A DNA stretch of 64,000 nt. It comes from Laetmonice hystrix. Taxonomy: Eukaryota. The notes beneath the pieces are model-generated. The model ran no database searches and was not told the origin of the DNA. It saw only the letters and a program-made list of their open reading frames with translations. This document shows, piece by piece, positions 7,832 through 58,515 of the stretch (the first letter of the stretch is position 1; every line of letters begins with the position of its first letter). The position numbers and the translations under genes are program-made. The DNA lies in contig OZ249445.1 of NCBI GenBank assembly GCA_965235115.1, forward strand, positions 8,804,001 through 8,868,000, written 5' to 3'.

Positions 7832-8155
<324 letters not shown>

Positions 8156-18568: not shown

Positions 18569-19009
<441 letters not shown>

Positions 19010-36286: not shown

Positions 36287-36440
36287 CAGGGCTCGAAAAA
36301 ACCTACGTCCGATCGTCCGAGACGACTAGAATATGTCTCTGGGCAAGTAAAATTTAAGGTTTGTGTAGTATGTCTTGGTTACTACTTGCCCGAAGGGCAA
36401 GTTCGGGCAAGTAAAACTGTTAGATCTTTTTCGAGCCCTG
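36287..36440. mobile_element. hAT-like MITE nested in the Gypsy element, apparent 5-bp TSD
   Basis: ATGTT|CAGGGCTCGAAAAA ... TTTTTCGAGCCCTG|ATGTT; internal GGGCAAGT repeats. Confidence 0.8.
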
Positions 36441-37045: not shown

Positions 37046-37461
37046 AGACTGACATGGTGTGCCATCCGGCAAATGCTAATGTGGTACCAGGCGCCCACGC
37101 CCAGCCAATCGGAAGGCGGTCCAATCAATGGGTGAGAAATAGCCAGTCACGGATGATTGACAGGCGAATACAATAGAGCAGGGGTCATCGGACCGCAATT
37201 TTCAAATCCAAAGGCCAGGCAAGAGTAGAAATTGGTATTGATTTTCGATCATTTCTAATGTTCATCGATTCCTGGCCTCGACACTGTAGTGTAGGTATAT
37301 TAGGATGCCCTCTGACGATTATGCAGTTTGGGCATGTGAATGCGATGGATTTCGCCCGTTATTGCCAAAAACCATGGCATGGGACCTCTTCACTCAGCGA
37401 TGTCTGGGAACCAAATGAGCTGGTGGGCGTCACCCTTCCCTTTTATAGTGCACATCGGTCT
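37046..37461. mobile_element. TTAA-targeted insertion (Kolobok-like termini) in the Gypsy RT
   Basis: TTAA|AGACTGA ... TCGGTCT|TTAA. Removing it restores RT RLPFGINSAPEEF. Confidence 0.7.
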
Positions 37462-40400: not shown

Positions 40401-40670
40401 TAGAATATCACGGCCTGTGTGCCTGGCCTGTACACACTGGCGGTGGACGTTTCTTTTAAATCCGATACAAGATATTTCTGATATTTAGATGTTAGTGCAC
40501 TCCTTGTAGGATAACACCCATGGCATACAATATTAAGTTTAGTGAGCTTGGGTTGGGTACGGAGTACTTTTTGTGTAAGAAGTGTTGTTACTGTCATTAC
40601 AAGTTTTGTTGCTAGTCAGTTACTCTCATTACTAGTTTTGGTTCCTAGTCAGAAGTTTGAATACTATATA

Positions 40671-40861
40671 CCGTATATGTCCCTTTAGCAGGGCATGTGC
40701 GTGTGCAAAAAAGCAGTGCGCGGCAATAGGGAGGTTGCACCGGGAGCTTACAAACTTTAGACTAGGTGGCGCGTCGAATACGGGTTTCCGGCACAGCTTG
40801 TTTGATAAAATGCGGGGGTGCGTGGCAAATAGGTAGTGCACGGCTAAAGGGACATATACGG
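40671..40861. mobile_element. Tc1/mariner(pogo)-like MITE
   Basis: TA|CCGTATATGTCCCTTTAGC ... GCTAAAGGGACATATACGG|TA. Confidence 0.8.
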
Positions 40862-41668
40862 TATTTACAAGGGGCTAGTATAACCAGTGGCCTCTAGTAT
40901 GAACATGGGGTTTGTTTTGAGAGAAAGGGGATGTAGTGCATTCCATCTATAAGAACTCGTTCCGATACACGATCCGTGTTTTACCATTCCGTGTTTTGTA
41001 CAAACCCTGAGCATGTGGGAGGGGAAAATAAACAACGTTCTTCCACCCTACACCCACAAGTCGATGGTTGCATTCATTTCAATGCCTTACCAAACTAATA
41101 CAATACTGCTTTACATGTCCAATGTATTGAGGTAAACCTGTGAGCTTGAGCAATAAATGTCACCTCAATCTGTCTCCAACGTGAGAACCAAGTTGATAAA
41201 CACAGAGGGGCTGAACATTTTCCTAACCCTCATACAAGCAAGGACAGAGCTAAAATATATTCTTGCAGATAAGAGGGGTTAGTTTTGTATGTCTCAAGTT
41301 CTAAAGCAATCAAACGACACTTGGTACCAAAATTTCCTGGGGAGAGGTGTTGTTGAAAGATGAAGTACCGGCCGGATGTCGTGCTAAAATATATTTTCAG
41401 GAATGCTAGCACGTACAGGACTGTTGTGGATGTTGAAACATATTAAATTCTGGAATAGTGAGCTGTGCTGCAGCCAGATCTTACATGGCGGATTCTACAC
41501 GGCCAGTATTTTTCAGCCTGGCTTAGAGAATGGTGAATCTGAAGCTGTCCTTTAATATATATTAGTTGCATGATTTATAGCACATTACAGGGCGAACTGC
41601 ATCAGATCTGATCTTAAAACTTCTGGAAGGAAAAGTCTAAATGTGTTCGTACCTTTGTATGTTTACAG

Positions 41669-41991
41669 GATGTTGGACGTGGAGGATCCAGGTAGTTGGA
41701 GGAAATAACAACATCCCAGGTGACCTCATCTTGAAGAGAAGAGCTGAAGAACTATTTGCCAGGATAGAGAGTGAAGAATTACGTGCTTGGGAGATATCCA
41801 TAAGTGAATAATGACTCTCTGGGAAGATGGACAACTACTCACCCGGAAGGTGGCCAGGAGAGAAGTTGAAACTACTTGCAAGGAAGATCGCCAGGAGTGA
41901 AGAACGATTTGCTGAGAGGAGAGCCCATTGTGAAGAACTGTTCGCCAGGAAGATGGACAGCTACCCACTCAGCCATCAACTCTAAACCCAG
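41669..41991 (+). other. Exon-like segment 1 of a putative spliced unit in the left arm
   Basis: tttacAG acceptor and GTaact donor; the mirrored copy (56051-56265, minus strand) keeps both signals. No clean reading frame. Confidence 0.4.
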
Positions 41992-42110
41992 GTAACTTTA
42001 ATATCAATGGCTTTCTCATTTATTCACTGAAAACATTATTGTCATTTTGTTCCATTTAACGTCACACTATGATTTATATATCATACATATCATTTGTATA
42101 TCATTCCAAG

Positions 42111-42723
42111 GGATGAAAATGAAAGGAGACTCCCACGCGACGAAATGTGTCCTGAGCTGTCACCACAACGAACTGTGTCCTGAACCGTCACCACGACGAA
42201 CCATCACCATGACGAACTGTGTCCTGAACCGTCAACACGACGAACTCTGTCCTGAACTGTGTCCTGAACCGTCACCATGACGAACTGTGTCCTGAACCGT
42301 CACCACGACGAACTGTGTCCTGAACCGTCACCACGACGAACTGTGTCCTGAACCGTCAACATGACGAACTGTGTCCTGAACTGTCACCACGACGAACTGT
42401 GTCCTGAACCGTCACCACGACTCGTGGAACTGTGTCCTGAACCGTCAACATGACGAACTGTGTCCTGAACCGTCACCACGACGAACTGTGTCCTGAACCG
42501 TCACCACGACTCGTGGAACTGTGTCCTGAACCGTCACCACGACGAACTGTGTCCTGAACCGTCACCACGACGAACTGTGTCCTGAACCGTCAACATGACG
42601 AACTGCGTACCATGATGAACTGTGATCTGAGCCAGCAATATGATAAACTATGTCCTGTCGAAACTGTCACCGTGATGTCCCAAACTGTGACCCAAGCAGC
42701 CTGCAGCCTTCTGACTTTATCAG
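42111..42723 (+). other. Exon-like segment 2, containing the 28-bp satellite; open from ATG 42612 to a phase-1 donor
   Basis: ttccaAG acceptor and caG|GTgatt donor; MMNCDLSQQYDKLCPVETVTVMSQTVTQAACSLLTLS ends in phase 1. Confidence 0.35.
42146..42612. repeat. 28-bp minisatellite, left arm
   Basis: Unit GACGAACTGTGTCCTGAACCGTCACCAC with variants. Confidence 0.95.
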
Positions 42724-43020
42724 GTGATTATTTTCTTCCAGTTTATAGGCTCAAATTTACCTTAGGAAGTGAACTGTAGTCTGTACTTGCAAGTGATAGA
42801 AAGATTCTGCTACTCATGGTATAAAAGGACGTAAAGTATACAAGGGGAGGACATGGAACATTGACTCTGCCGAACGTAAAAACCTGTTAGAAAATTACTG
42901 GTAATTACTTCTCCAGTGGGTTGAATTAACAGGATTCAGTGTCCAAGTAACTGATTTGGCAAGTTACTCTGATATGTACAGAAAAAATGAATAATGTCTT
43001 GTTTCTTTGTTTTTCTGAAG

Positions 43021-43194
43021 GTTGGGCACGAAGAGAAGAAACCATTGACCTGCACCAAGTCACAGTGTACCAACTGCAACCCTTTGTACGGCTTACCAAC
43101 AAGAAGGATGCTGCTGTTGTAACGGAAAATTTATTGGTCCCTTGCGGTTGTAAAGAGAGTCTGAGAGAGATAGAGTTTTTCTATCAAATCCAAG
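43021..43194 (+). other. Exon-like segment 3, 174 bp, phase 1-1, fully open
   Basis: Polypyrimidine tract plus gaAG acceptor and caaG|GTatt donor; encodes (G)WARREETIDLHQVTVYQLQPFVRLTNKKDAAVVTENLLVPCGCKESLREIEFFYQIQ. Confidence 0.4.
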
Positions 43195-44136
43195 GTATTA
43201 AATACCTAGACTAGCCAGGATCAGTCAATAGATTTAACAGTTGAGTAGGTTTGCAGTGAAATTGTGTTAGGATCTTTCTAGTATAAGAAAGTCTAGATGT
43301 ACCTCGGAGGTAATGTTTTAGGAGAGCAAAATACTGATTCTTAAAGAAATGGTGAGGGGGTTGGTGAAATAAGGGAAATATTATAGTAAAATGATCCCTT
43401 GGTGTATGATATACGGTAAAATATTTGATAAAACAAAAGAATCCAGAAGAATCTAGCTTCGATTAGCCCTGACCCAGAGGGCATTATAAGTCCACTGCAT
43501 GTCTGTATGTACATGTCCAGTCGGAGTTTTACTCTCCTCTCGCTGTGAAAATGGCCTTAGATGCTGACACGGCGTAAACCATCAATACTCACCGACTCAC
43601 TTGTCCTGTTGGTCACCATTGCACAGAAGTTGCTTATTGGTGCATTTACCTGACTTTTTGCATTGTAGAAAAGCATCAGGTTTAGGACCCCGCATTTGTA
43701 ACGGCACCCAGCCGAGTGGGATATCCTAGGTAAAGATGTTAGGGTTTAGGGTTTAATTTAAAAAGTGAAAAATCAGTATCACCCTGTGTCAAGTGTAGGC
43801 CGAAGATTAGACGAAGAAAATTTCTAATAAGAAGACTAGAAAATAGTCCAAGAGGATATAACTTGGTTGATGTTGGATTTGACTCGAAACTTTAAAACCA
43901 CGCCCACAGTCTTATGGAGACTACCTCAGCCCTGTCCCTAACATTATCAATTAAGAACAATGTTAGGGAGAGCAAAAAGCAACATACAGCTATTGGATAG
44001 GTCGCCAAGACTGGAAAGGTCATTAAGTACCAGACCTATTGCCCTTGACCTTTACAGGTGAAACCGAAATCATGTCGATTTTTGATTGGGCTTATCTGGA
44101 AAATATACGTGTTGACCGAGTACACTAGCACATCTC

Positions 44137-44530
44137 TGCTGAGGTCAACTTCGAAATCAGTGAGGACCTCGTTTCTAATCAGACCGAGGTGTCTCTGCTG
44201 AGGTCAACTTGTGAGTCAGTGAGGACCTCGCTGAGGTCAACTTTTGAGTCAGTGAGGACCTTGCTGAGGTCAACTTCTGAGTCAGTGAAGAGCTTGTATC
44301 AAATCAGACCGAGGTGTCTCCGCTGAGGTCAACTTCTGAGTCAGTGAAGAGCTTGTATCAAATCAGACCGAGGTGTCTCCGCTGAGGTCAACTTTTGAGT
44401 CAGTGAGGAGCTTGTATCAAATCAGACCCAGGTGTCTCCGCTGAGGTCAACTTTTGAGTCAGCGAGGAGTTAGTTTGTTTCAAATCAGACCGAGGTGTTT
44501 CTGCAGAGGTCACCTTTTGAGTCAGTGAGG
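44137..44530. repeat. 59-bp minisatellite (with ~30-bp subunits), left arm
   Basis: Unit CTGAGGTCAACTTCTGAGTCAGTGAAGAGCTTGTATCAAATCAGACCGAGGTGTCTCCG. Confidence 0.9.
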
Positions 44531-45008
44531 TTCTTGGAATATAGATAACGTCTATCGGCAGCATTCAAAGCATGATTGTAGAATAATTCATGAGTATTCA
44601 CTAATTCAGAGGACGAGGTAGATCAGTAGGTTTTAATATATACAAAACTGTTGACTAGCAGTAAAGAACCAAGCATGTCATCTTTGCAAAAATTATCCAG
44701 TACATTTAAAGACCGTTTTAATCTAGTGCTAGAAGGATAATGTCAGTCATATTTGATGTGAAGCTGGTCAGATTTGCCGTATCAAAGGTTTATACATATC
44801 AGTAAATTATGTCACGTGTTACATTATTGCACAAAAGTGATGGAAATCTTCCGTTTCATTTGTTGATGTTGTGTAGTTCAATTCTGTATACATTATGAAT
44901 TTGAAATGATATTTGAATATTTGGGTCATGTAACTTAATGATTGGCAAACCTGACCAGTTAATTCAGACTTTTATTGTTATGGAAAGTATTGCTCATTCA
45001 GAGATCAT

Positions 45009-45780
45009 GTTAGTTCTGGTAGTTTCCGCCAGGGTGGCAGCGCCTGTCAGGTAGTCCGCCAGGGGGCGCCACAGTCGGGGTCATGTGACCTCCTGGGCTT
45101 GGCCCGTTCGTATGTAACATCTTGGTATGTATCCAGAGTGGAATGTTGAGGTGAGAGAACACTGTTGTAGTTTGTCGGACCCACGTGTTGTTACGTTGGG
45201 AGTAATGTATTCTGGGACAGTCGTCCTCCTACAGTCCATGTGGTTGAACGGTAATGGTCGAGTTTGGTGGAGTGAATCCCTTGAAGGATTAACTGTTGCA
45301 GTGTGAGGTGTTTTGGTGGTGAAATGTTGTGGAAATTGTCTACACTACTAGTTATTGTATTCCTGTAAGATGTTGACTCATGTGATTGCTGTGATTGACC
45401 TTATGATATTGTACATCCAAATGGTTTCATCCTTGGGTAAGTGTTGGAATGTCACCAGTCGCTCATGTAGACCTTGGGAATCATCCCTTGGTGTCCAAAT
45501 TCTTGGAAACTTCTTCCAGCTCCATGATTTTGACCTAATGTCATAAGTTCTCCAATGGTCTCAGGTAAGTTGAAGAACACCAAGTTAACATTTACAATAG
45601 CATCAGGAATTGATTGACATTGTATGGTGGTTGGATTTGACAAGTAGGAAGTGTGTCATCACTGTGAAGACATTTCGGCGAGGACGACGGCACATCGAAG
45701 GGTGAGGAGATGATTAACGCTCATGTTTGGGTACCGATGGGCCCTGCTCCTTGGGCCTGATACTGGACTTCTTGATCTGT
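45009..45780 (+). mobile_element. Unclassified ~0.8 kb module, type A, left arm
   Basis: Begins with paired CTCF-like motifs (perfect CCGCCAGGGGGCGCC at 45056-70) and GGTCATGTGACC; aligns along its length with module B (48449-49310) at roughly two-thirds identity. Confidence 0.5.
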
Positions 45781-45859
45781 ATTCAAAACTGCTCCTCAAT
45801 TCATGGAGTTTTTAATAATTTAAAGGGGGAAGAAGTATTTTTAACAACTTTTATGGAAT

Positions 45860-46210
45860 GGTTTAGTGAACATCAGTGAAAGAAATACTAGGAGTGCCAA
45901 AACGTTAGCGTTAAATAGTGTAGACCATTTTAACTCAGCTCTTGGACAAGATGCATGGGAGTCGCATGCTGCCTAAACCATCATATTTCGGTTGGGATTT
46001 GTATTTCAAATGCCTGACAGGTTAACGATGGTTATGGTTTAGTGAACATCAGTGAAAGAAATACTAGGAGTGCAAATACGTTAGCGTTAAATAGTGTAGA
46101 ACATTTTAACTCAGCTCTTGGACAAGATGCATGGGAGTCGCATGCTGCCTGAACCATCATTTTTCGGGTGGGATTTGTATTTCAAATGCCTGACAGGTTA
46201 ACGATGGTTA
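45860..46210. repeat. ~175-bp direct tandem duplication, single copy in the right arm
   Basis: TGGTTTAGTGAACATCAGTGAAAG...GTTAACGATGGTTA occurs twice. Confidence 0.85.
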
Positions 46211-46924
46211 TTTACGCCATCTAAAAACTCAATTTCTGACCTCTAAAGTGGTTGGTGAACAAAAGTGAGCAGTTGAAATTGATATTTAAGAGAGACTTGA
46301 TTTTTTATGGTTTCTCGTAGAATCATAGATTTATTGTCAGTTACCGTAAAAGGTCACAGACACTGAACTGCTCATCTCAAAAATCAGTGCCACGAGGTGA
46401 GGGAAATTAGATCTTGTGTGTGCATGCACTGATTCACTGACTGATGCAGGTTGATCCTGACAGTTGGTATCCATGCAAATGGTGCTGAGGAAGTTTGAAT
46501 CACAGGTTGTTCAGCAAGTTATGATAAAAAATAAAGGGTGCTCGTCTAGAATTCTTTCCGTCGTTGCTGCCATCATTTTACAGCAGTCGATGGATTAGAA
46601 AAAGGATTCGGCTGTTCAATTCTTCTGATTATACATCCATACAATTCCACCATCCACAGAGGTTGACTACGCGCATGAAGGCCCTACTGGAGAGCTGTTC
46701 TCACTCTTATCAGTGAGGGACCAAACTAAACATGGCGCAAACTGGTGTGGCAACCACGCTGCATTATGAATAAGCATAGTACACAGAGCTCAGTTAATAG
46801 TTTATCGTTAGGACAAGGTGTACTGATTGATCCGATGGTCCATCCAGCAGGCAATGAACGTTTTCGTAACGTTATAATGTATGAATATAACGTTTTTGCA
46901 ACGTTTTGTGTAAACTCATTAGTG

Positions 46925-47490
46925 TATGTCTACAGACTGAGGCAGGTTGATCCTGGTGGTCTGGAGGGTTTATTATCGGTACAGGCTGATGTGTAAACTC
47001 ATTAGTGTATGTCTACAGACTGAGGCAGGTTGATCCTGGTGGTCTGGGATATACATGTACATGTGTATATCAAACTGACAGGGGGTGGTGCCACCTGGTG
47101 TAACTCTGAATTGTCGCAGAAATAGGATTTATAGAAGTGTTAGGATTGTAGGAAAGAATATTGTTAGGTGTACAGACTGATGAGGGTTGATCCTGATGGT
47201 CTGGTGGGTGAGTGATGTGTACAGACTGAGGCAGGTTGATCCTGGTGGTCTGGAGGGTGTGTGATGGGTACAGACTGGGGCAGGTTGATCCTGATGGTCT
47301 GGAGGGTGTGTGATGGGTACAGACTGGGGCAGGTTGATCCTGATGGTCTGGAGGGTGTGTGATGTGTACAGACTTGGGCAGGTTGATCCTGATGGTCTGG
47401 AGGGTGTGTGATGTGTACAGACTGGGGCAGGTTGATCCTGGTAGTCTGGAGGGTTTATTATCGGTACAGGCTGATGAAGGGTAATCCTGA
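46925..47490. repeat. 49-bp minisatellite, left arm
   Basis: Unit GTACAGACTGGGGCAGGTTGATCCTGATGGTCTGGAGGGTGTGTGATGT; core 47165-47480 plus two upstream copies. Confidence 0.9.
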
Positions 47491-47574
47491 TGGTCTGTTC
47501 TGTAGACTCATGGAAATGTTAGTCTAAAGTTTATTATTATGTTTTTCTTTAGCAAGGGATTGACAGGAAAAGGG

Positions 47575-48352
47575 GGTCAGGTATAGGGATTAAAGGTATA
47601 GGTATTAGGGTCAAGAGATCCGGTCCAGTTTAAACTCTGGGGAGTAGGTGAATCTACCCGCGGTTATGATCCTACCCGAGAAGAAAAGGAAGATGAAGAA
47701 AGAAGAGAAGATACACGGCATACTTACTATATCAGCTGTCAATATCCAACCACCATGCATTGTCGTCTCTTCCTTATGTTACTGTATTAATGGAAACTTG
47801 AGTTCTTCAGCTGACCGAGATCTGAGGGATTCATTATGTATCAGGTCAAACTCTGGTGGTTATTCTAATAGCAGGTAATACTAGTTCCAACTTTTCTCAC
47901 TAGGGGAGCGACTGGTGATATTTTAACACTTGACTTGATGGTGGAATTGTATGGATGTATATAATATGGTATAGGGACATGTCACTAGCAGTCACTTGTG
48001 CCGATGTCTTACAGGTATACAGTAATTAGTAGTGTAGATAGTTGTTGCAACACTTCACCTCTAAAAACACTTATCACTGTGGTAGTTAACTTTTCTATAG
48101 GATTCTCCCCACCATACTTTGCCGTTACTGTTTACCCCAGGGACTTAGGGAGGATGACTGTCCTAGAGTGCGTTACTCTCAGGGTAACAATACGTGGGCC
48201 GGCGAACTACTCAGTGTTCTCTTACTTTGATATTTCACTCTGGGTATATATCAAAATGTTATAATACGAATGGGCTGAGCTCGGGTGGTCACGTGACCCG
48301 ACGGTGGCGCCATCTGGTGGATTACTTGGATGGTGCTGCCACCTGGTGGCAA
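47575..48352 (-). mobile_element. Unclassified module, type B, left arm (inverted)
   Basis: Reverse complement of 48525-49310; CTCF-consensus motifs at 48306-20 and 48335-49, GGTCACGTGACC at 48287-98. Confidence 0.5.
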
Positions 48353-48354
48353 AT

Positions 48355-48448
48355 GTTGTATACACAATAAAACACTTCATTTCAGTATAATATGTATTTA
48401 TTTGAAATAAAGACATTTGAATAACATATACATACTTTTGTTGTACCT
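48355..48448. terminator. AT-rich palindrome spacer with poly(A) signals on both strands
   Basis: AATAAA at 48366 and 48406 (+) and TTTATT at 48397-48402 (AATAAA on the minus strand). Confidence 0.35.
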
Positions 48449-49310
48449 GCCAAAAAAGGGGGTGGAGGGCTGAGCATAACTAGCAAACCCCAGCAGTAGA
48501 GTCCCCAGACGTTAGTCCGATAGTTTCCACCAGGGGGCAGCACCAGCCAAGTAATCCACCAGAGGGCGCCACAGTCGGGTCACGTGACCACCCGAGCTCA
48601 GCCCATTCGTATTATAACATCTCGATATATACCCAGAGTGAAATATCAAAGTAAGAGAACACTGAGTAGTTCGCCGGCCCACGTATTGTTACCCTGAGAG
48701 TAACGCACTCTAGGACAGTCATCCTCCCTAAGTCCCTGGGGTAAACAGTAACGGCAAAGTATGGTGGGGAGAATCCCTTAGAAAAGTTAACTACCACAGT
48801 GATAAGTGTTTTTAGAGGTGAAGTGTTGCAACAACTATCTACACTACTAATTACTATATACCTGTAAGACATCGGCACAAGTGACTGCTAGTGACATGTC
48901 CTTATACCATATTATACATCCATACAATTCCACCATCAAGTCAAGTGTTAAAATATCACCAGTCGCTCCCCTAGTAAGAAAAGTTGGAACTAGGGTTACC
49001 TGCTATTAGAATAACCACCAGAGTTTGACCTGATACAGTCATAATGAATCCCTCAGATCTCGGTCAGCTGAAGAACTCAAGTTTCCATTAATACAGTAAC
49101 ATGAGGAAAAGACGACAATGCATGGTGGGTGGATATTGACAGCTGATATAGTAAGTATGCCGTGTATCTTCTCTTCGTTCTTCATCTTCCTTTTCTTCTC
49201 AGGTAGGATCATAACCGCGGGTAGATTCACCTACTCCCCAGAGTTTAAACTGGACCGGATCTCTTGACCCTAATACCTATACCTTTAATCCCTATACCTG
49301 ACCCCCTTTT
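48449..49310 (+). mobile_element. Unclassified module, type B, right arm
   Basis: Starts GCCAAAAAAGGGGGTGGAGGGCTGAGC; CCACCAGGGGGCAGC at 48527-41, CCACCAGAGGGCGCC at 48556-70, GGTCACGTGACC at 48578-89. Confidence 0.5.
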
Positions 49311-49379
49311 CCTGTCAATCCCTTGCTAAAGAAAAACATAATAATAAACTTTAGACTAACATTTCCATGAGTCTACAGA

Positions 49380-50030
49380 ACAGACCATCAGGATTACCCT
49401 TCATCAGTCTGTACCGATAATAAACCCTCCAGACCATCATGATCAACCTCCCTCAGTCTCTACACATCACTCACCCACCCACCAGACCATCAGGATCAAC
49501 CCTCATCAGTCTGTACACCCAACAATATTCTTTCCTACAATCCTGACACTTCTATAAATCCTATTTCTGCGACTATTCAGAGTTACACCAGGTGGCACCA
49601 CCCCCTGTCAGTTTGATATACACATGTATATCCCAGACCACAAGGATCAACCTGCCTCAGTCTGTAGACATACACTAATGAGTTTACACATCAGCCTGTA
49701 CCGATAATAAACCCTCCAGACCATCAGGATCAACCTGCCTCAATCTGTACATCACACACCCTCCAGACCATCAGGATCAACCTGCCCCAGTCTGTACACA
49801 TCACACACCCTCCAGACCATCAGGATCAACCTGCCCCAGTCTGTACACATCACACACCCTCCAGACCATCAGGATCAACCTGCCCCAGTCTGTACACATC
49901 ACACCCCCTCCAGACCATCAGGATCAACCTGCCTCAGTCTGTACACATCACACACCCTCCAGACCATCAGGATCAACCTGCCCCAGTCTGTACACATCAC
50001 TAACCCACGAGACCATCAGAATCAGCCTGC
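49380..50030. repeat. 49-bp minisatellite, right arm (inverted copy)
   Basis: Unit CCCTCCAGACCATCAGGATCAACCTGCCCCAGTCTGTACACATCACACA. Confidence 0.9.
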
Positions 50031-51039
50031 ATTAAGTCCTAACAAACTTTCCTATAATCCTGACACTTCTATAGATCCTACTAAAAAAATTCCGCCAGCG
50101 TTAGTTCGGTATAGTATCAGACCATCAGGATTCACCTTCATCAGTCTGCAGACATCCACGACCCAGCTCTCACAGAATGCCATAAAAACATTTTATTAAT
50201 AAATTATAACGTTACGATAACGTTTAATAAACGGTCTTTGCTGGCTGGGTAGACCTCCTTCAGTCAGTCGGCCTAACGATAGAGCCTAAACTTTTGACTA
50301 CATCTATTCATATGGCGTGATTGATTAACCATCAATTAACGTAGTCAAGGCCAACCTTTGTGCTTTCCCAGAATCAGAAGAACTGCACAGCCGAATCCTC
50401 ATAGTAATCCATGGACTGCCGTAAAGTGGTGGCAGCGATCACGGAAAGAATTCTAGACGAGCTGTTCAGGGTCTTTGGCCTTTTATTCTACATCATAACT
50501 CGCCTAACAACCTGGGATTTAAACTTCCTCAGCATCATTTGCACGGAGACCAACTGTCAGGATCAACCTGCATCAGTCACCGCATGCAGACACAAGATCT
50601 AATTCCCCTGACCTTGTGGCAGCGCTTTTAGCGATAATCAGTTCAGTGTCTGTGACCTTTTACAGCAACTGACAAGCAATCTCTACGAGACTCTACAAGA
50701 AACCATAAAAAATTAAGTCTCTCTTAAATATCAACTTCAACTGCTCACTTTTGTTCACCAACCACTTTAGAGGTCAGAAAGTGAGATTTTAGGTGGCGTA
50801 AATAACCATCGTTAACCAGTCAGGCATTTGAAATACAAATACCAACCGAAATATGATGGTTCGTGACCAACATATCTTGTCCAAGAGCTGACTTAAAATG
50901 TTCTACACTATTTAACCCTATTTCCTAATATTTCTTTCACTGATGTTCACTAAACCATTCCATAAAAGTTGTTAAAAATACTTCTTCCCCCTTTAAATTA
51001 TTAAAAACTCCATGAATTGAGGAGCAGTTTTGAATACAG

Positions 51040-51880
51040 ATCAAGAAGTCCAGTATCAGGCCCAAGGAGCAGGGCCCATCGGTACCCAAACATGAGCGTT
51101 AATCATCTCCTCACCCTTCGATGTGCCGTCGTCCTCGCCGAAATGTCTTCACAGTGATGACACACTTCCTACTTGTCAAATCCAACCACCATACAATGTC
51201 CATCAATTCCTGATGCTATTGTAAATGTTAACTTGATGTTCTTCAACTTACCTGAGACCATTGGAGAACTTATGACATTAGGTCAAAATCATGGAGCTGG
51301 AAGAAGTTTCCAAGAATTTGGACACCAAGGGATGATTCCCAAGGTCTACATGAGCGACTGGTGACATTCCAACACTTACCCAAGGATGAAACCATTCGGA
51401 TGTACAATATCATAAGGTCAGTCACAGCAATCACATGAGTCAACATCTTACAGGAATACAATAACTAGTAGTGTAGACAATTTCCACAACATTTCACCAC
51501 CAAAACACCTCACACTGCAACAGTTAACCCTTCAAGGGATTCACTCCACCAAACTCGACCATTACCGTTCAACCACATGGACTGTAGGAGGACGACTGTC
51601 CCAGAATACATTACTCCCAACGTAACAACACGTGGGTCCGACAAACTACAACAGTGTTCTCTCACCTCAACATTCCACTCTGGATACATACCAAGATGTT
51701 ACATACGAACGGGCCAAGCCCAGGAGGTCACATGACCCCGACTGTGGCGCCCCCTGGCGGACTACCTGACAGGCGCTGCCACCCTGGCGGAAACTACCAG
51801 AACTAACATCTGGGGCTCCACCACTGGTGTCTGACAGTTATGCTCAGCCTTCCACCCCCTTTTTTTCTGGCTGTTTTTTA
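51040..51880 (-). mobile_element. Unclassified module, type A, right arm (inverted)
   Basis: Near-identical reverse complement of 45009-45780, plus an extra ~80-bp 5' segment shared with module B at 48449. Confidence 0.5.
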
Positions 51881-52356
51881 TTTTATTGATCTCTAAATGA
51901 GCAATACTTTCCTTCAACAATAAAAGTCTGAATTAACTGATCAGGTTTGCTAATCATCAAGTTACATGACCTAAAAAATTAAAATATAATTTCAACATAA
52001 TGTATAGAATATTAACTACACAAAATCACAGAATGAAATGGAAATTTTCCATCACTTTTGTGCAATATGTAACACGTTACAAATTTACTAGTACTATAAA
52101 CCTTTGATAAGGCAAATCTGACCAGCTTCACATCAAATATTGACTGACATTATCCTTCTAACACTAGATTAAAATGATTTTTAAATGCACTGGATAACTT
52201 TTGTAAAGATATTACATCCTTAGTTCTTTACTGCTAGTCAACACTTTCGTACACATTAAAACCTACTGATCTACCTTGTCCTCTGAATACTCACTAATTA
52301 TCCTACAATCATGCTTTGAATGCTGTCGACAGACATTATCTATAATCCAAGAACCT

Positions 52357-53283
52357 CACTGACTCAGAAGTTGACCTCAGCGGAGACACCTCGGTCTGAT
52401 TTGATACAAGCTCTTCACTGACTCAGAAGTTGACCTCAGCGGAGACACCTCGGTCTGATTTGATACAAGCTCCTCACTGACTCAGAAGTTGACCTCAGCG
52501 GAGACACCTCGGTCTGATTTGATACAAGCTCCTCACTGACTCAGAAGTTGACCTCAGCGGAGACACCTCGGTCTGATTTGATACAAGCTCCTCACTGACT
52601 CAGAAGCTGACCTCAGCGGAGACACCTCGGTCTGATTTGATACAAGCTCCTCACTGACTCAGAAGTTGACCTCAGCGGAGACACCTCGGTCTGATTTGAT
52701 ACAAGCTCCTCACTGACTCAGAAGTTGACCTCAGTGGAGACACCTCGATCTGATTTGAAACGAGGTCCTCCCTGACTCACAAGTTGACCTCAGCGGAGAC
52801 TCCTCGGTCTGATTTGAAACGAGGTCCTCCCTGACTCACAAGTTGACCTCAGCGGAGACACCTCGGTCTGATTTGATACCAGCTCCTCACTGACTCAGAA
52901 GTTGACCTCAGCGGAGACACCTCAGTCTGGTTTGAAACGAGGTCCTCACTGACTCAGACGTTGACCTCAGCGGAGACACCTCGGTCTGATTTGAAACGAG
53001 GTCCTCCCTGACTCAGAAGTTGACCTCAGTGGAGACACCTCAGTCTGGTTTGATACAAGCTCCTCACTGACTCAAAAGTTGACCTCAGTGAGGTCCTCCC
53101 CGACTCAAAAGTTGATCTCAGCGAGGTCCTCACTGACTCAGAAGTTGACCTCAGTGGAGACACCTCAGTCTGGTTTGATACAAGCTCCTCACTGACTCAA
53201 AAGTTGACCTCAGCGAGGTCCTCCCTGACTCAAAAGTTGACCTCAGCAAGGTCCTCACTGACTCAGAAGTTGACCTCAGCAGA
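52357..53283. repeat. 59-bp minisatellite, right arm, expanded (~15 units)
   Basis: Period 59 visible as a 1-base shift per 60-base line; reverse complement of the 44137 array. Confidence 0.95.
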
Positions 53284-54549
53284 GATGTGCTAGTGTACTC
53301 GGTCAACACGTTTACAGATAAGCCCAGTCAAAAGTCAACATGATTTCTGTTTCACCTGTAAAGGTCAGAGGGCTATAGGTCTGGTACTTAATGACCTTCA
53401 TGCAAGTTATATACTCTTGCACTATTTTTCTTTTTATTAAAATTTTCTTCGTCCAATCTTTTGGCTAAACTTACCAAAATATGGTGATGCTGGCAGCCAA
53501 TTAGGTCCAATTTTAAGATTTCCGTTAAGTGGACCTAATGCTTATCTACAAGGTAGCAAATTCTGTCCAATGGTGACCAACAGGACAAGCGAGTCAGTGA
53601 GTATTGATGGTTTACGCCATGTCAGCATCTAAGGCCATTTTCACAGCGAGAGGAGAGTAAAACTCCGACTGGACATGTACATACAGACATGCAGTGGACT
53701 TATAATGCCCTCTGGGTCAGGGCTAATCGAAGCTAGATTCTTCTGGATTCTTCTCTTTTATCAAATATCTTACCATATATCGTACACCAAGGGATCATTT
53801 CACTACAGTATTTCCCTTATTTCACCTATAACAACCTCCTCACCATTTCTTTAAGAATCAGTATTTTGCTCTCCTAAAACATTACCTCCGAGATACATCT
53901 AGACTTTCTTATACTAGAAAGATCCTAACACAATTTCACTGCAAACCTACTCAACTGTTAAATCTATTGACTGATCCTGGCTAGTCTAGGTATTTAATGA
54001 CTCTCTTTACAACTGCAAGGGACCAATAAATTTTCCGTTACAACAGCAGCATCCTTCTTGTTGGTAAGCTGTACAAAGGTTTTCAGTTGGTACACTCCGA
54101 CTTGGTGCAGGTCAATGGTTTCTTCTCTTCGTGCCCAACCTTCAGAAAAACAAAGAAACAAGACATTATTCATTTTTTCTGTACGTATCAGAGTAACTTG
54201 CCAAATCAGTTTCTTGGACACTGAATCCTGTTTCTTCAGCCCACTGGAGAAGTAATTACCAGTAATTTCCTAACGGGTTTTTATGTTCGGCAGAGTCAAT
54301 GTTCCATGTCCTCCTCTTGTATACTTTACGTCCTTTTATACCATGAGTAGCAGAATCTTTCTATCACTTGCAAGTACAGACTACAGTTCACTTCCTAAGG
54401 TAAATTTGAGCCTATAAACTGGAAGAAAATAATCACCTGATAAAGTCAGAAGGCTGCAGGCTGCTTGGGTCACAGTTTGGGACATCACGGTGACAGTTTC
54501 GACAGGACATAGTTTATCATATTGCTGGTTCAGGTCACAGTTCATCATT

Positions 54550-54972
54550 GTACACAGTTCGTCATGTTGACGGTTCAGGACGCAGTTCATCGTGGTGACG
54601 GTTCAGGACACAGTTCGTCGTGGTGACGGTTCAGGACACAGTTCGTCCTGGTGACGGTTCAGGACACAGTTCGTCGTGGTGACGGTTCAGGACACAGTTC
54701 GTCATGGTGACGGTTCAGGACACAGTTCGTCGTGGTGACGGTTCAGGACACAGTTCGTCGTGGTGACGGTTCAGGACACAGTTCGTCGTGGTGACGGTTC
54801 AGGACACAGTTCGTCCTGGTGACGGTTCAGGACACAGTTCGTCGTGGTGACGGTTCAGGACACAGTTCGTCGTGGTGACGGTTCAGGACACAGTTCGTCG
54901 TGGTGACGGTTCAGGACAGAGTTCGTCGTGGTGACGGTTCAGGACACAGTTCCTCGTGGTGATGGTTCAGGG
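54550..54972. repeat. 28-bp minisatellite, right arm (~15 homogeneous copies)
   Basis: Unit GTGGTGACGGTTCAGGACACAGTTCGTC. Confidence 0.95.
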
Positions 54973-55375
54973 GACCACATAAACTTCCCATCCATTGTGT
55001 CACTGATCCAGATCTCGGTTCCCAATGCCGCCCAAAGTCGCAGTGATGAGGCAGCAGTCATAAACACCTTGAAATGAACATATGAAACCATCAACAAACA
55101 GCTCAATCAGAGAAAAACTTCATTCAAAGGTCTTTATCATCAATGACTCAAAAACTATTGCTTTAAACTGATGTCTGCACTAGTCTTTGTTCAATTACAA
55201 GTACTATTTTCACTGATCATTATATTGAAATAAACTGACTAAATGTTCATAAAAGAGAAATATTTCAGGATATTTTGAGAGTACTTTCTTTTCAAACGAA
55301 GGTACCTTTACATTTCCTCACCTATCGACTTTCTGTTAAGATTCTTAAGCCATATATTACCACAGCTTGCTTCCC

Positions 55376-55577
55376 CTACTGTTACCTCAATCAAAGCTAT
55401 CAAAGTTACTCATCCGTTTGGTCATGTGTGGTCCATGTACTGATGCAGTTACGATGATGGTGGGTGTAGGGGAGATGTCTACTGTTACCTCAATCAAAGC
55501 TATCAAAGTTACTCACCCGTTTGGTCATGTGTGGTCCATGTACTGATGTAGTTACAATGATGTTGGGTGTTGGGGAG
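55376..55577. repeat. ~100-bp direct duplication inside a ~1 kb right-arm-specific insertion
   Basis: CTACTGTTACCTCAATCAAAGCTATCAAAG...GGGGAGA occurs twice; 54975-55925 has no left-arm counterpart. Confidence 0.75.
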
Positions 55578-57088
55578 ACCAGCCCACCGTGATCTTCGTT
55601 CAACCCATGAGGCCATGGTTGGTTTCTCTCCAAGCACATACGCTAGAATTGGGAGACAACAACACTTTAAAATACTTTTTCTACAGACGCTTTCTTGTCA
55701 CTTTTAAAACTTATAATTAAGTATTGTGTTAAACAGCCGAGGCTGACTGACACTCAGTCATCAACTAATTCAGCTTTATTCCCCTTATCAACAACTCTCA
55801 CAATTTCTGGGCAACTACACACAGATAACTGCTGACTGTCTTCGAGAATCTGAATATCATAATACACCGTACACATAGAAATCATGTCGATGTTAGATCA
55901 TGATAGATGACAAACTTCATCAATTTGAAATGACACGTGGGAGTCACCACAAATAATAATATATCATAGTGTGACATTATATGGTAAAAAAATGTCTATG
56001 ACAATAATGTTTTTGGTTAATGATGATAATGATATTAAAGGCAAAGTTACCTCACTGCTGTCCATCTTCCCAGGGTCATTATTCACTTATGGATATCTCC
56101 CAAGCACGTAATTCTTCACTCTCTATCCTGGCAAATAGTTCTTCAGCTCTTCTCTTCAAGATGAGGTCACCTGGGATGTTGTTATCTCCTCCAACTACCT
56201 GGATCCTCAAGTCCACTGCTGCAACTACGTCCAACATCTGATGGGTGGGCGTGTGGTCTATAAACCTGTAAAGATACAAAGATACGAACAAATTTAGACT
56301 TTTCCTTCCAGAATAGTTTAAGGCGGGATTTTAAGATTAGGGTGGGCTTAATTTTCAGCAAGGTCTGCACTCACACTGTGATATGCTATAAATCATGCAA
56401 CTAGTAATACATGATAAAGGACGGCTTCAGATTTACCATTTTATATCAGAAAAGTGCTTGAAAGTCCTCGAAAGTCCTTGAATTTCTATTTGGCAGCTTG
56501 TAAAAATGTGAAAATGTTTATTCCTTGAAGTACCCTGGAACTTCAAAGCATTCAGAGAATTTTGTTTTTTTTACTTTAAAAAATCTGGTAAAACTGCCCT
56601 CGATGACGATCTGATTATTTCAGAACATACACTGTGTAAACTGTTGCAATGAACGGAGCTGTCTCCCTCTGCAGAAAGCGCTCTCAGCCATACAACATCA
56701 CATGCCCGAGGGGTTAAGGTAAATCCACACCTCCACCATTGGCATGGTGGGAGAATTTAGTTGGCTTCGTTGTTCTCCACCCTAGATCTATGTGGTGGGT
56801 TTTGTCCCGTTCTATAGTATTGAGAGAAAAGAGTTGAAGTATAAGAATCTGATATGGATTTTTTTTCATCGTTTCATTTTGATTTTCTTGAGAAGTAGGA
56901 AGGCTGTGCTGGTAAATTAGGTATCACTTTGTAGCTTATCTTCTTGGCTTTCAAATGACACCAACTGTAAAGTACCAGGCGAAAAGGAGCAAGGCATGGG
57001 TGGAAAAAAATCAACATATGTCAGGGGTGGATCAGGCAGTGGAGGTGGTGGTGGAGTTTTTCACACCCACTGCCACATGAACCGCTTA

Positions 57089-57246
57089 CAGGGTTTCCTG
57101 GATATTTTCGACTTTTGGGGGGAATGGTGCGATTTTTTTTTGGGGGGGGGGGAGAGTAATGCAAAATATTTCCCTCTTGGGGGGGGGAGCAGCTGAATAA
57201 TGGGTAGGGGAGTCTCCCCCCCCAAAAGGGCCTGCAGGAAACCCTG
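57089..57246. mobile_element. hAT-like MITE
   Basis: CAGGGTTTCCTG ... CAGGAAACCCTG; flanks GCTTA/ACTTA (possible 5-bp TSD with one mismatch). Confidence 0.55.
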
Positions 57247-58515
57247 ACTTACTTCAAAGTAAGTGGAAAGTACAAGTACTTGTTTATTGTAATGCATTTT
57301 CCTATTAATTCATGACTCATAATTAGCATAATCTCGTTAATGGATGATTATTAAATTAAAAGTACATTTTTTGATATAGGCCTTGGGTGGCTTATTGATA
57401 TATCCAAAAATAGCAAAATTGCCATTTTTAACCATGTAAGTTGTAACACATTTTATGACTACTTTGTGACTTGCGACCAGAATGTTTATTGCATGTTGTA
57501 TATACTGTCGGATCCCTTCCTTGCCACTTGCTCAGATTTAACATTTCCTAGCCCTTAATATATGAAAACCCTCATGACCTCATCTGCCCCCACCCTTGCC
57601 CACTCCCAATGGCAATGCATGTCTATCCATCAGTTGCCACCAGGAGGAGCAAGCGGGGGTAGTCAGCTAAGGACATGGACCGGCAGGGAAGGGAGGCTCC
57701 CTTGGAGACGAGCTAGCAGACCCAGAGCTGCCTACTCCAAAACACAATTTTGTGTATAACCACAGGATATAGTTGGCTATTCCAACATGATGCCGACAAT
57801 TTGGCTCCATATTTGCTGATATTGGGAATTTTGTTACACTTAAGAGCTTATAAGTTGGGTATATCGCCCATGATAACTTAAACCCCACGAAATTTGGTGG
57901 AAAGTAAAGATCCATGGCCCTGACCTTAACCCTAACCCCTGCCCAAACATTTCATGGGAAAGTTATCATGGGGGAAGAACCATAATTTGGTGCAACAACA
58001 TTATTAACAGAAAGGAAAGGTAGCACATTTGCAAATTATAAATATTGATTTCAAAATGATTTAGTTTTACTGTTGGGATTTTTCCCATGGTAATACGGAC
58101 AACCACTTTGATTTACGGACAACCACTATCACAGAAAATGGTTGTCCGTGGGCACCTGCTTCAAAATGTGATTTGACGAGCACTGCGCAAGGAAACTAAA
58201 AGTGTACAATGCTGAAAATGAATGAGAATAAAATGCATCTGTTTAAATTTCAAACATAAAATAGCTGAGAGGGGGCAAGCAGTGCCTTATATTTTTACAT
58301 AGCCTTCAGGTTTTTCTTCAAGAATATAAGTTTCTTCACAACAAACTTATATATTATAAACTTGAAACATTCTCCACACTTTGAAAGTTTAGGCAGAACG
58401 CTGGGCAGTAACAGTCAATGTCAGTTGAGCACACTCTTTCTGAAGGCAGACTAGGTGTAGGTATTCCTGTGACCAGTGCCTAACGTTTGCTTTGCGTACT
58501 TACGTATACGCCCTG

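What the first reader, a model, noticed from the sequence alone, without database searches (positions are those of the whole stretch)
41528..56440. 15-kb palindrome with sharply mosaic arm identity, suggesting arm-to-arm gene conversion
Seen: the arms are colinear mirror images, but identity changes in blocks. 45009-45887 vs 50930-51807 differ at only a handful of positions (~99% by eye), and the inner B modules are ~97% identical. The immediately flanking 44530-45000 and 46220-46720 segments are only ~80-85% identical with indels. Module A sits at the same junction (GAGATCA) in both arms, so it predates the duplication, yet it is far more similar between arms than its flanks. Established: arm-to-arm conversion maintains mammalian sex-chromosome palindromes. 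Inference: an old inverted duplication is being locally re-homogenised, or selection favours a pairing-competent hairpin.
Basis: partly seen in the sequence, partly recalled or inferred. Interest (0 to 1): 0.8.

Follow-up and report, generated by a model that had tools for sequence, protein, structure and literature searches.

The report
Palindromic repeat family with patchy arm-to-arm copying
The 15-kb palindrome is real and is one of at least nine copies of a non-coding repeat in this worm genome; comparing the copies shows that its two arms are old and distinct but keep overwriting each other in a few indel-free blocks, a known process seen here unusually clearly.

Summary
The window has a 14.9-kb imperfect palindrome (41529-56440, 171-nt spacer at 48353-48523). 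Arm identity changes in blocks: about 99% in module A, 97-99% in module B, and 71-90% or unalignable between them.

The locus is not unique. Modules A and B occur in at least 29 arms: nine palindromes and about eleven single arms, on three contigs, 15 of the 20 loci on this one. All are non-coding, built of unique modules plus 28-, 59- and 49-bp tandem arrays, and have ragged outer ends.

The family allows a direct test. In the flanks of A (S2, S3), arms fall into two old lineages (alpha, beta) shared across copies, and partner arms are never sisters (AU p from 0.007 down to 4e-45). In A and B, arms group by copy (supports 77-100), and an alpha clade is rejected (p = 3e-37 and 8e-28).

A 77-nt indel at the edge of A stays alpha/beta-specific in every arm. 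The spacer keeps one orientation in 9 of 9 copies.

So conversion between arms has recurred after the family spread, without crossover, in tracts that stop at indels and arrays. The "unique old duplication" frame is not, and hairpin selection is untested. This is a known mechanism in a new setting: moderate interest.

The parts
41529..48352 (+). Left (alpha-lineage) arm of the palindrome
   Evidence: Inverted homology with 48524-56440. Alpha lineage is defined by absence of the 77-nt segment and by the S2/S3 trees.
48353..48523 (.). Central spacer, derived from the 3' end of the beta unit. It has AATAAA on both strands.
   Evidence: The single-arm copy s5.27 carries B plus spacer as far as the equivalent of window 48384, then a (CT)n repeat. 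The spacer is conserved and in phase with the beta marker in 9 of 9 copies, and the AATAAA motifs are conserved.
48524..56440 (-). Right (beta-lineage) arm of the palindrome
   Evidence: It carries the 77-nt marker found in all beta arms and in both single-arm copies examined.
45007..45893 (+). Module A, left copy (partner 50923-51809): homogenised block, 99% between arms
   Evidence: 887 nt, 99%. The tree groups arms by copy and an alpha clade is rejected at p = 3e-37. 36 copy-private substitutions are shared by both arms and there are 0 alpha/beta-fixed sites.
50923..51809 (-). Module A, right copy
51810..51886 (-). 77-nt segment at the outer edge of A. It is present only in beta arms and marks the outer limit of the A conversion tract.
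   Evidence: junction alignment; present in 9 of 9 beta arms and 2 single arms, absent at that position from all 9 alpha arms.
45858..46211 (+). 176-bp tandem duplication (2 units) private to this window's left arm. It marks the inner limit of the 99% tract.
   Evidence: TRF; 2 units only in win_L, 1 in 18 other arms and none detected in t20.35_R.
44560..45000 (+). S2, unconverted flank (partner about 51887-52330): the alpha and beta lineages are retained
   Evidence: Within-copy distance 0.109 against 0.103 between copies; partner is nearest in 0 of 14. The tree splits alpha from beta. Partner-sister is rejected for 5 copies. 4 fixed and 8 near-fixed alpha/beta sites.
46220..47160 (+). S3, unconverted segment between A and B (partner about 50100-50720)
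   Evidence: Partner identity is 71-92%, against 87-98% to alpha arms of other copies. Partner is nearest in 1 of 18. AU tests.
47447..48352 (+). Module B, left copy (partner 48524-49430): homogenised block. Its centre-proximal ~450 nt are an inverted, ~75% copy of the start of A.
   Evidence: The B tree pairs arms by copy (100, 100, 100, 93, 88) and an alpha clade is rejected at p = 8e-28. Internal inverted repeat.
42950..43340 (+). Copy-specific beta-to-alpha conversion tract in this window's left arm (edges +/-100 nt)
   Evidence: 96.5-99.3% to the partner, but 85-92% to alpha arms of c7.41 and c8.37; it switches back to alpha-like from about 43340; 14 of 16 diagnostic sites carry the beta state; AU p = 0.02 (post hoc).
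42138..42605 (.). 28-bp tandem array (partner 54552-54971)
44133..44530 (.). 59-bp (33-bp related) tandem array, 4.4 units (partner 52354-53280, 14.5 units)
47168..47497 (.). 49-bp tandem array (partner 49711-50030). It is the outer limit of the B tract.
35226..41102 (.). Later insertion of about 5.9 kb into the alpha-side outer part of the unit. It holds an LTR-retroelement pol fragment at 37506-39745.
   Evidence: Family homology stops at 41103 and resumes at 34114-35225, colinear with c7.41 and t3.95. Pfam RVT_1, RT_RNaseH and Integrase_H2C2.
56441..57723 (-). Beta-side outer, non-palindromic part of the unit, interrupted by a 620-bp insertion at 56859-57483
   Evidence: Homology with 5-8 other beta arms.

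Best explanation
The locus is one copy of a dispersed, non-coding repeat family. The core of the family is an imperfect 15-20-kb palindrome: an alpha arm and a beta arm joined tail-to-tail through a 171-nt spacer that belongs to the beta unit.

Shown:
- The alpha-spacer-beta junction arose once and the whole structure then multiplied. There are at least 9 palindromic copies, plus beta-type single arms.
- By then the arms already differed by about 11-29% in S2 and S3 and by indels.
- Since then, within each copy, the arms have repeatedly overwritten each other in a few indel-free blocks: A (~0.9 kb), B (~0.9 kb) and, in some copies, 42146-43524 or S3.
- No crossover has been fixed.
- Tracts end at structural heterologies: the 77-nt indel, the 176-bp duplication, the tandem arrays and the spacer.

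Inferred: the mechanism is non-crossover homologous repair (synthesis-dependent strand annealing, or mismatch repair of an intrastrand or inter-arm heteroduplex). It can start and extend only where the arms pair well. High identity therefore sustains itself in A and B, while indel-rich segments escape and keep diverging.

How the family spreads, and whether the modules have a function, remains open.
For: (1) Family and single origin. There are 29 full-length A copies, always with B 2.3-3 kb away, and 18 of them lie in 9 inverted pairs. The spacer sequence is conserved and its orientation is in phase with the beta marker in 9 of 9 copies. The outer-end asymmetry is shared between copies.

(2) Old arm lineages. 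S2 and S3 trees split alpha from beta across copies. Partner is nearest in 0 of 14 and 1 of 18. Partner-sister is rejected in all 10 AU tests. The 77-nt indel is strictly lineage-specific.

(3) Concerted evolution in blocks. The A tree pairs arms by copy (99, 99, 98, 90, 86, 77) and the B tree likewise (100, 100, 100, 93, 88). An alpha clade is rejected at p = 3e-37 (A), 8e-28 (B) and 3e-51 (S0+S1). Copy-private substitutions shared by both arms number 36 in A and 35 in B, against 0 in S2 and 4 in S3. Alpha/beta-fixed sites number 0 in A and 4 (plus 8 near-fixed) in S2.

(4) Tract behaviour. In the two oldest copies, arm differences within A cluster in the first and last ~100 nt (13 and 18 of 43; 4 and 29 of 45). 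S3 is homogenised only in the t3.95/t2.12 lineage. The window has its own beta-to-alpha tract at 42950-43340.

(5) This copy. Private changes on win_L are 12/426 (S2) and 23/743 (S3), but 1/851 (A) and 3/738 (B).

(6) Non-coding. No ORF of 90 aa or more, no Pfam match, no Rfam match.
Against: - Within the four closely related C11 copies, A and B are 96-100% alike in all eight arms. Copy-private shared changes there are few (1-2 per copy). The window's 99% is therefore mostly inherited, and ongoing conversion in this very copy rests on the 42950-43340 tract and the private-substitution deficit.
- That deficit (2-5 fold) is larger than conversion alone predicts from the few shared changes. Inter-copy exchange, constraint or lower mutability in A and B may also contribute. 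In the B tree, c7.41_L groups with t20.35.
- No GC bias was seen, although biased conversion is common.
- Only 20 of at least 29 arms could be sampled.
- No long reads were available, so assembly of the arms is supported only by the nine concordant copies and by short unitigs at the spacer.
- The alpha/beta group used in the AU tests was partly defined after seeing trees, although the 77-nt marker is independent of them.
Confidence: 0.8

Rival explanations
1. Homogenisation happens only when a copy is made. The unit spreads through a single-stranded or snap-back intermediate in which the arms pair. Mismatch repair then corrects the well-paired blocks (A, B), while indel-rich parts stay looped out. 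Resident copies would not convert afterwards.
For: The same blocks are homogenised in all nine copies and are bounded by heterologies. Closely related C11 copies show few post-split shared changes. The arms could form a long hairpin across a 171-nt spacer.
Against: - The homogenised blocks differ between lineages: S3 only in t3.95/t2.12, and 42950-43340 only in the window copy.
- The mode of spread is unknown: no termini or target-site duplications were found.
- Formally this is still arm-to-arm conversion, differing only in timing.
Confidence: 0.12
2. Modules A and B are simply conserved (purifying selection or low mutation rate), and the flanks drift. No exchange between arms is needed.
For: Private substitutions are 2-5 times rarer in A and B than in S2 and S3. 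S3 evolves 2-4 times faster than A even between same-lineage arms.
Against: - Conservation alone would keep an alpha/beta split in A and B with short branches. Instead arms group by copy, an alpha clade is rejected (p = 3e-37 and 8e-28), and 71 copy-private changes are shared by both arms.
- Beta-to-beta distances between copies are about the same in S2 (about 1-3%) as in A (about 1.4-2%).
Confidence: 0.04
3. Exchange between different copies (ectopic conversion among the 20 or more family members), rather than between the two arms of one copy, keeps A and B alike.
For: All eight C11 arms are 96-100% alike in A and B. In B, c7.41_L groups with t20.35 (support 96) and c7.85_L with c7.41_R. win_R is nearly identical to c8.37_L in S2.
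Against: Copy-specific pairing with supports of 86-100 for t20.35, u18.57, t13.2, c8.37 (B), t2.12 and t3.95 needs partner-to-partner transfer. Two independent hits from a third copy on both arms is less parsimonious. This is probably a contributing process, not the main one.
Confidence: 0.08
4. Assembly artefact: a false inverted duplication, two haplotypes mis-joined head-to-head, or polishing that averaged the arms.
For: No long reads could be examined, and the public runs are held only as 80-260-nt unitigs.
Against: - Nine loci on three contigs share the same alpha-spacer-beta junction, the same lineage-specific 77-nt indel and the same S2/S3 lineages.
- The arms differ by indels and array lengths, which haplotypes or chimeric reads would not produce.
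- Unitigs bridge the spacer into the right arm (48428-48631).
- A is flanked within less than 1 kb by lineage-specific sequence that anchors reads.
Confidence: 0.03
5. Module A is a younger mobile element that inserted independently into both arms.
For: A has sharp edges and much higher identity than its flanks.
Against: - All 29 A copies lie at the same position of the same larger unit. None stands alone.
- The sharp edges are a 77-nt deletion in alpha arms and a private 176-bp duplication.
- The start of A has an old 75% inverted counterpart at the end of B in every arm.
Confidence: 0.01

Closest known systems
Large palindromes of mammalian sex chromosomes (human Y P1-P8; primate and mouse X palindromes) and the willow sex-chromosome palindromes
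   Same: Inverted arms of more than 8 kb around a short spacer. Arms evolve in concert by non-crossover arm-to-arm gene conversion (PMC8600007, PMC8327919, PMC8981503, bioRxiv 10.1101/800185, PMC7023750).
   Different: Those are single loci with more than 99% identity along the whole arms. They carry testis-expressed gene families and show GC-biased conversion. Here there are at least 9 dispersed paralogous copies, no genes, conversion limited to blocks of about 0.4-1.4 kb between indels, arms otherwise 71-90% alike, and no GC bias.
Foldback-type transposons (Drosophila FB, Tetris, Galileo; nematode Tm1; sea-urchin TU)
   Same: Multi-copy, non-autonomous. Long inverted arms made of unique domains plus tandem arrays whose unit number differs between the two arms and between copies (PMC4079207, PMC3169594). 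In Tetris, repeats of one element sometimes group together, which the authors read as homogenisation.
   Different: Foldback elements have defined termini, target-site duplications and usually arms of 1 kb or less up to a few kb. Here arms are 7-11 kb, outer ends are ragged and asymmetric, no target-site duplication was found, and single-arm copies end at the palindrome centre next to an AATAAA.
Copy correction of the plastid genome inverted repeat, and inverted-repeat recombination assays in yeast (own knowledge)
   Same: Intramolecular conversion keeps inverted repeats alike. Tracts are blocked by heterologies and depend on the length of uninterrupted homology.
   Different: Plastid repeats stay virtually identical over their whole length and also flip the single-copy region by crossover. 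No flip isomer is seen here.
Hairpin-RNA (endo-siRNA) loci of Drosophila (own knowledge)
   Same: Long inverted repeats, sometimes with tandem units, that could be transcribed into a hairpin. The spacer here has conserved poly(A) signals on both strands.
   Different: No RNA evidence is available here. The poly(A) signals lie in the loop, which would end convergent transcripts rather than allow read-through into a hairpin.

Membership tests
Palindrome maintained by arm-to-arm gene conversion | Two long inverted arms around a short unique spacer | tested here: met
   Arms are about 6.8 and 7.9 kb with a 171-nt spacer.
Palindrome maintained by arm-to-arm gene conversion | Arms of one palindrome are closer to each other than to the corresponding arm of a related palindrome (concerted evolution) | tested here: met
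   Met in blocks A, B and partly S0-S1, using paralogous copies instead of orthologues. Not met in S2 and S3.
Palindrome maintained by arm-to-arm gene conversion | Near-identity (over 99%) along the whole arm | tested here: not met
   Only A reaches 99%. Other segments are 71-98% or unalignable.
Palindrome maintained by arm-to-arm gene conversion | GC-biased substitution pattern in converted sequence | tested here: not met
   Changes shared by both arms: W>S 18, S>W 30. Changes private to one arm: 52 and 71. Fisher p = 0.61. The sample is small.
Sex-chromosome ampliconic palindrome | Arms carry expressed (germline) gene families; the locus is on a sex chromosome | tested here: not met
   No ORF of 90 aa or more and no Pfam match in the arms. 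The sex linkage of contig C11 is unknown; 15 of 20 loci lie on it.
Foldback transposon | Multi-copy element with long inverted arms built of tandem repeats and unique domains, lacking a transposase | tested here: met
Foldback transposon | Defined termini shared by copies, flanked by target-site duplications | tested here: not met
   Copies end at different outward points. c7.85 has sharp matching ends but no duplication, and other arms run past them.
Foldback transposon | Empty sites or insertion polymorphism showing mobility | not testable with these tools
   No second individual or sister genome is available.
Hairpin-RNA / long dsRNA locus | Transcription through both arms and small RNAs mapping to them | not testable with these tools
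   No run is on record as RNA. Run X3 has about 100-fold excess depth on B, but its kind is unknown.

The most novel reading that the evidence does not exclude
The family is a set of functional loci and not junk. Each arm would be a transcription unit running toward the conserved two-way poly(A) spacer, with B as an abundant 3' exon. The A and B modules, which are also inverted 75% copies of each other within an arm, would be kept pairing-competent by selection acting through conversion. The palindromes would then yield long double-stranded or hairpin RNA, for example as a small-RNA source against a related mobile element. The concentration on contig C11 would reflect an ampliconic chromosome region.
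Probability: 0.1. Interest if true: 0.7.

Novelty: new member of a known kind. Interest (0 to 1): 0.42.

Why it matters
Arm-to-arm conversion is usually inferred from one palindrome compared across species. Here nine paralogous palindromes with two marked arm lineages act as natural replicates. They show directly where conversion tracts start and stop: at a 77-nt indel, at tandem arrays and at the spacer. They show that crossover is avoided, that tracts differ between copies, and that no GC bias is visible. This gives a compact system for studying how heterology limits conversion in an animal outside vertebrates and flies. It is also a caution for repeat annotation: identity between the arms of an inverted repeat cannot be used to date it. 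It does not reveal a new mechanism.

Tried and rejected
- Rfam scan of 40500-58500: no match.
- Open frames in the arms: none of 90 aa or more with a start codon. The ten longest stop-to-stop frames outside arrays gave no Pfam family, only one sub-threshold chance hit. The long 'ORFs' in other copies are 49-bp arrays that are open in all frames.
- RNA evidence: both run searches returned only four runs of one sample, none on record as RNA.
- Read support: the runs are held as 80-260-nt unitigs. They cover every bin and bridge 48428-48631, but cannot test long-range structure.
- Termini and target-site duplications: homology between copies decays raggedly and is broken by nested insertions. No shared end was found.
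- Genome searches with the outer flanks were swamped by unrelated high-copy repeats.
- GC-biased conversion: not detected.
- The internal 515-nt inverted repeat of the beta arm (48452-48968 and 51865-51352) was examined as possible transposon ends. There is no duplication at its edges, so it was not pursued.
- Earlier scan notes: no note on sister copies of this family.


Full report
**Setting.** The window is G000:C11:8804001-8868000 of a 627-Mb, 35-contig animal genome. Earlier notes of this scan call the animal a worm.

**1. The observation**

An inverted-repeat search finds 51 pairs centred near 48438. The innermost arms are 47960-48352 and 48524-48916 (97%), with 171 nt between them. Module A is 45007-45893 against 50923-51809: 887 nt at 99%. 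BLAST of the window against its own reverse strand places the outermost pair at 41529-41590 and 56376-56440.

A gapped MAFFT alignment of the left arm against the reverse-complemented right arm confirms block-wise identity:

| Segment | Arm-to-arm identity |
|---|---|
| 45098-45897 | 99.0-99.5% |
| 47449-48244 | 97-99.5% |
| 42292-43485 | 95-99% |
| 44581-44976 | 88.5-90.5% |
| 46098-46678 | 78-91% |
| 43671-44093, 46679-47188 | no usable alignment |

The arms also hold three tandem arrays whose unit numbers differ between arms: 28 bp, 59 bp and 49 bp.

- The left flank of A is nearer 89% than 80-85%.
- The junction of A is not the same in both arms. After GAGATC the right arm has 77 nt (51810-51886) that the left arm lacks.
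- At the other edge of A, the left arm alone has a 176-bp tandem duplication (45858-46211).

**2. It is a family, not a unique locus**

Searching the genome with module A gives 29 full-length matches at 90-99%. Searching with module B gives the matching set, always 2.3-3 kb from A. Eighteen of the A copies form nine inverted pairs with B modules facing each other across about 170-195 nt:

| Contig | Position of palindromic copies (Mb) |
|---|---|
| C11 | 7.41, 7.85, 8.37, 8.85 (the window) |
| C20 | 2.12, 3.95, 13.2, 20.35 |
| C13 | 18.57 |

Eleven further loci, all on C11, show one arm only. These counts are lower bounds, because only 40 candidates were scored per search.

I fetched 10 kb on each side of the centre for the eight other palindromes. 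Flanks outside the unit are unrelated between copies. It reaches 41103 on the left and resumes at 34114-35225, beyond a 5.9-kb insertion that holds an LTR-retroelement pol fragment. On the right it reaches 56858 and then 57484-57723.

The outer parts are asymmetric. One arm of each copy carries a 'long' outer segment and the other a different one, and this asymmetry is shared between copies.

One single-arm copy (C11:5.27 Mb) was read past B. It continues through 140 nt of the 'spacer', ends about 20 nt after an AATAAA, and runs into a (CT)n repeat. The spacer therefore belongs to one arm type.

After orienting copies by an independent marker (section 3), the spacer aligns in one orientation in 9 of 9 copies. 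Two AATAAA motifs on one strand and one on the other are conserved. The arm-spacer-arm junction therefore arose once, and the whole palindrome was then multiplied.

The arms are non-coding:
- no ORF of 90 aa or more in 40-58 kb;
- no Pfam family in the longest frames;
- no Rfam family;
- the long open frames in other copies are 49-bp arrays.

I could not find the termini. c7.85 is a 20.3-kb palindrome with sharp matching ends but no target-site duplication. Other arms run on past those ends, broken by nested insertions.

**3.

For seven segments I extracted the homologous piece from all available arms (18 palindromic and 2 single), aligned them, and compared partner arms with arms of other copies.

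| Segment | Within-copy arm distance | Between-copy distance | Partner is nearest |
|---|---|---|---|
| S2 (44560-45000) | 0.109 | 0.103 | 0 of 14 |
| S3 (46220-46680) | 0.115 | 0.121 | 1 of 18 |
| A | 0.021 | 0.044 | 10 of 18 |
| B1 | 0.020 | 0.049 | 12 of 18 |
| B2 | 0.022 | 0.050 | 11 of 18 |

In S2 and S3, near-identical arms (distance 0.012-0.017) exist in other copies.

*Trees.* S2 and S3 split the arms into two lineages that cut across copies. The alpha lineage includes win_L, c7.41_L, c8.37_R, t3.95_R, t2.12_L and t13.2_R. The beta lineage includes win_R, c7.41_R, c8.37_L, t3.95_L, t2.12_R and t13.2_L, plus single arms. This agrees with the outer-end asymmetry. A and B instead pair the two arms of a copy, with supports of 99, 99, 98, 90, 86 and 77 in A, and 100, 100, 100, 93 and 88 in B.

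*An independent marker.* The 77-nt segment at the outer edge of A is present in all 9 beta arms and both single arms, and absent from all 9 alpha arms.

*AU tests.* With alpha defined this way, a clade of alpha arms is rejected in A (p = 3e-37), in B (p = 8e-28) and in S0+S1 (p = 3e-51). Conversely, partner arms as sisters are rejected in S2 and S3 for all five copies tested (p from 0.007 down to 4e-45).

*Plain site counts.*

| Segment | Copy-private changes shared by both arms | Alpha/beta-fixed sites |
|---|---|---|
| A | 36 | 0 |
| B | 35 | not listed |
| S2 | 0 | 4 fixed, 8 near-fixed |
| S3 | 4 | not listed |

Conservation alone cannot give this pattern, and neither can independent insertion of A. 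It requires sequence transfer between the two arms of a copy after the copies separated, confined to particular blocks.

**4. Behaviour of the tracts**

The 99% block of A lies exactly between two structural heterologies: the 77-nt indel and, in this copy, the 176-bp duplication. B lies between the 49-bp array and the spacer. Although A next to it is homogenised in all nine copies, the 77-nt indel has never been transferred.

In the two oldest copies, the arm differences inside A are concentrated in its first and last ~100 nt, while the inner ~700 nt stay about 98% alike. The counts are 13 and 18 of 43 for u18.57, and 4 and 29 of 45 for t20.35. This is what tracts that fade toward heterologies would look like.

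Tracts differ between lineages. S3 is homogenised only in t3.95/t2.12 (within-copy distance 0.03). The outer block 42146-43524 is homogenised in some copies only.

No crossover has been fixed. A crossover inside A or B would flip the spacer relative to the 77-nt marker, and all nine copies are in phase.

There is no GC bias among changes that reached both arms.

**5. This copy in particular**

The four C11 palindromes are close relatives.

Two results still point to exchange in this very copy.
- Between about 42950 and 43340, the window's alpha arm is 96.5-99.3% identical to its partner but only 85-92% to the alpha arms of c7.41 and c8.37. Further in, it switches back to being alpha-like. It carries the beta state at 14 of 16 diagnostic sites (AU p = 0.02, post hoc).
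- Private changes on the left arm are 12/426 in S2 and 23/743 in S3, but 1/851 in A and 3/738 in B.

The size of that deficit across the C11 copies (2-5 fold) exceeds what the few shared changes can account for. Exchange between copies or some constraint probably adds to it. In the B tree, c7.41_L groups with t20.35 and c7.85_L with c7.41_R.

**6. Mechanism**

Shown: two old arm lineages; repeated, block-limited transfer between partner arms; no crossover; tract limits at heterologies.

Inferred: non-crossover homologous repair between the arms. This could be synthesis-dependent strand annealing after a break, or mismatch repair of an inter-arm or hairpin heteroduplex. It needs uninterrupted homology, so well-matched blocks stay matched while indel-rich blocks drift apart.

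A variant in which correction happens only when a new copy is made cannot be excluded. The lineage-specific tracts argue for at least some conversion in place.

**7. What the family is remains unresolved**

It resembles foldback transposons in being multi-copy, non-autonomous, and having long inverted arms of unique domains plus variable arrays (PMC4079207, PMC3169594). It fails their defining test of shared termini with target-site duplications.

Several features fit no class cleanly: single arms that end at the centre beside a poly(A) signal, ragged outer ends, and the excess on one contig (15 of 20 loci on C11).

**8. Reads**

Only four runs of one sample hold the sequence, and they are stored as short unitigs. 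They cover the whole centre and bridge 48428-48631, but cannot test long-range structure. No run is on record as RNA. One run of unknown kind (X3) has about 100-fold more depth on B and the 49-bp array than on S3. This is a lead, not evidence.

**9. Verdict**

The framing as a unique old duplication akin to sex-chromosome palindromes is not supported. Hairpin selection is untested.

The mechanism is known (PMC8600007, PMC8327919, PMC8981503, PMC7023750, bioRxiv 10.1101/800185). The setting, a dispersed family of marked palindromes acting as replicates, is a useful new example.

Noticed in passing
window 37506-39745: Fragmented LTR-retroelement pol on the + strand (Pfam RVT_1, RT_RNaseH, Integrase_H2C2, in separate frames). 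It lies inside a ~5.9-kb insertion (35226-41102) that splits the alpha-side outer part of the repeat unit.
   Followed up: partly
window 32604-33386 and 60867-61500: Two very young high-copy repeats. One is ~780 bp with copies 99-100% identical on many contigs (1320 first-look candidates). The other is ~634 bp with dozens of copies at 97% (5785 candidates). They swamped the searches with the flanks.
   Followed up: no
L023:1-312 (C11:7839048-7839359): A ~305-bp dispersed repeat (876 candidates, 88-96% identical) inserted into the left arm of copy c7.85.
   Followed up: no
window 47500-49220 and 49733-50074, run X3: In one run of unknown kind (59 million letters), unitig depth on module B and the 49-bp array is 3000-11000, against 3-85 on S3. 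The three other runs of the same sample show no such contrast. It could mean strong transcription of the inner arms if X3 is RNA.
   Followed up: partly
window 48353-48523 and the same place in 8 other copies: The spacer keeps two AATAAA motifs on one strand and one on the other in all nine copies, within a small TTTATTTGAAATAAA palindrome. A single-arm copy ends about 20 nt past it. This fits convergent 3' ends, as another first-stage note on this stretch proposed.
   Followed up: partly
window 45007-45464 with 47906-48353; 48452-48968 with 51352-51865: Each arm has its own internal inverted repeat: the start of A and the end of B are ~75% inverted copies. The locus is thus a nested palindrome with four copies of a ~450-515-nt module. 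No target-site duplication at its edges.
   Followed up: partly
C11 against the other contigs: 15 of the 20 family loci lie on contig C11, between 1.7 and 20.1 Mb. The four closest palindromes are spaced 0.44-0.53 Mb apart (7.41, 7.85, 8.37, 8.85 Mb), although their flanks are unrelated.
   Followed up: no
window 44560-45000 and 46220-47160 (left arm): The window's left arm has an unusually long private branch in S2 and S3. 13 of its 35 private changes are G>A on the + strand.
   Followed up: no
L042 (C20:13183383-13193382): A ~6.6-kb insertion in the outer beta arm of copy t13.2 carries open frames of 286-600 aa on one strand. It is probably an autonomous mobile element and was not examined.
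   Followed up: no
window 18575-19006: Exon encoding the C-terminal part of a LIX1-family protein (Pfam LIX1, E = 1e-72). The palindrome lies about 22 kb downstream of it on the + strand.
   Followed up: no
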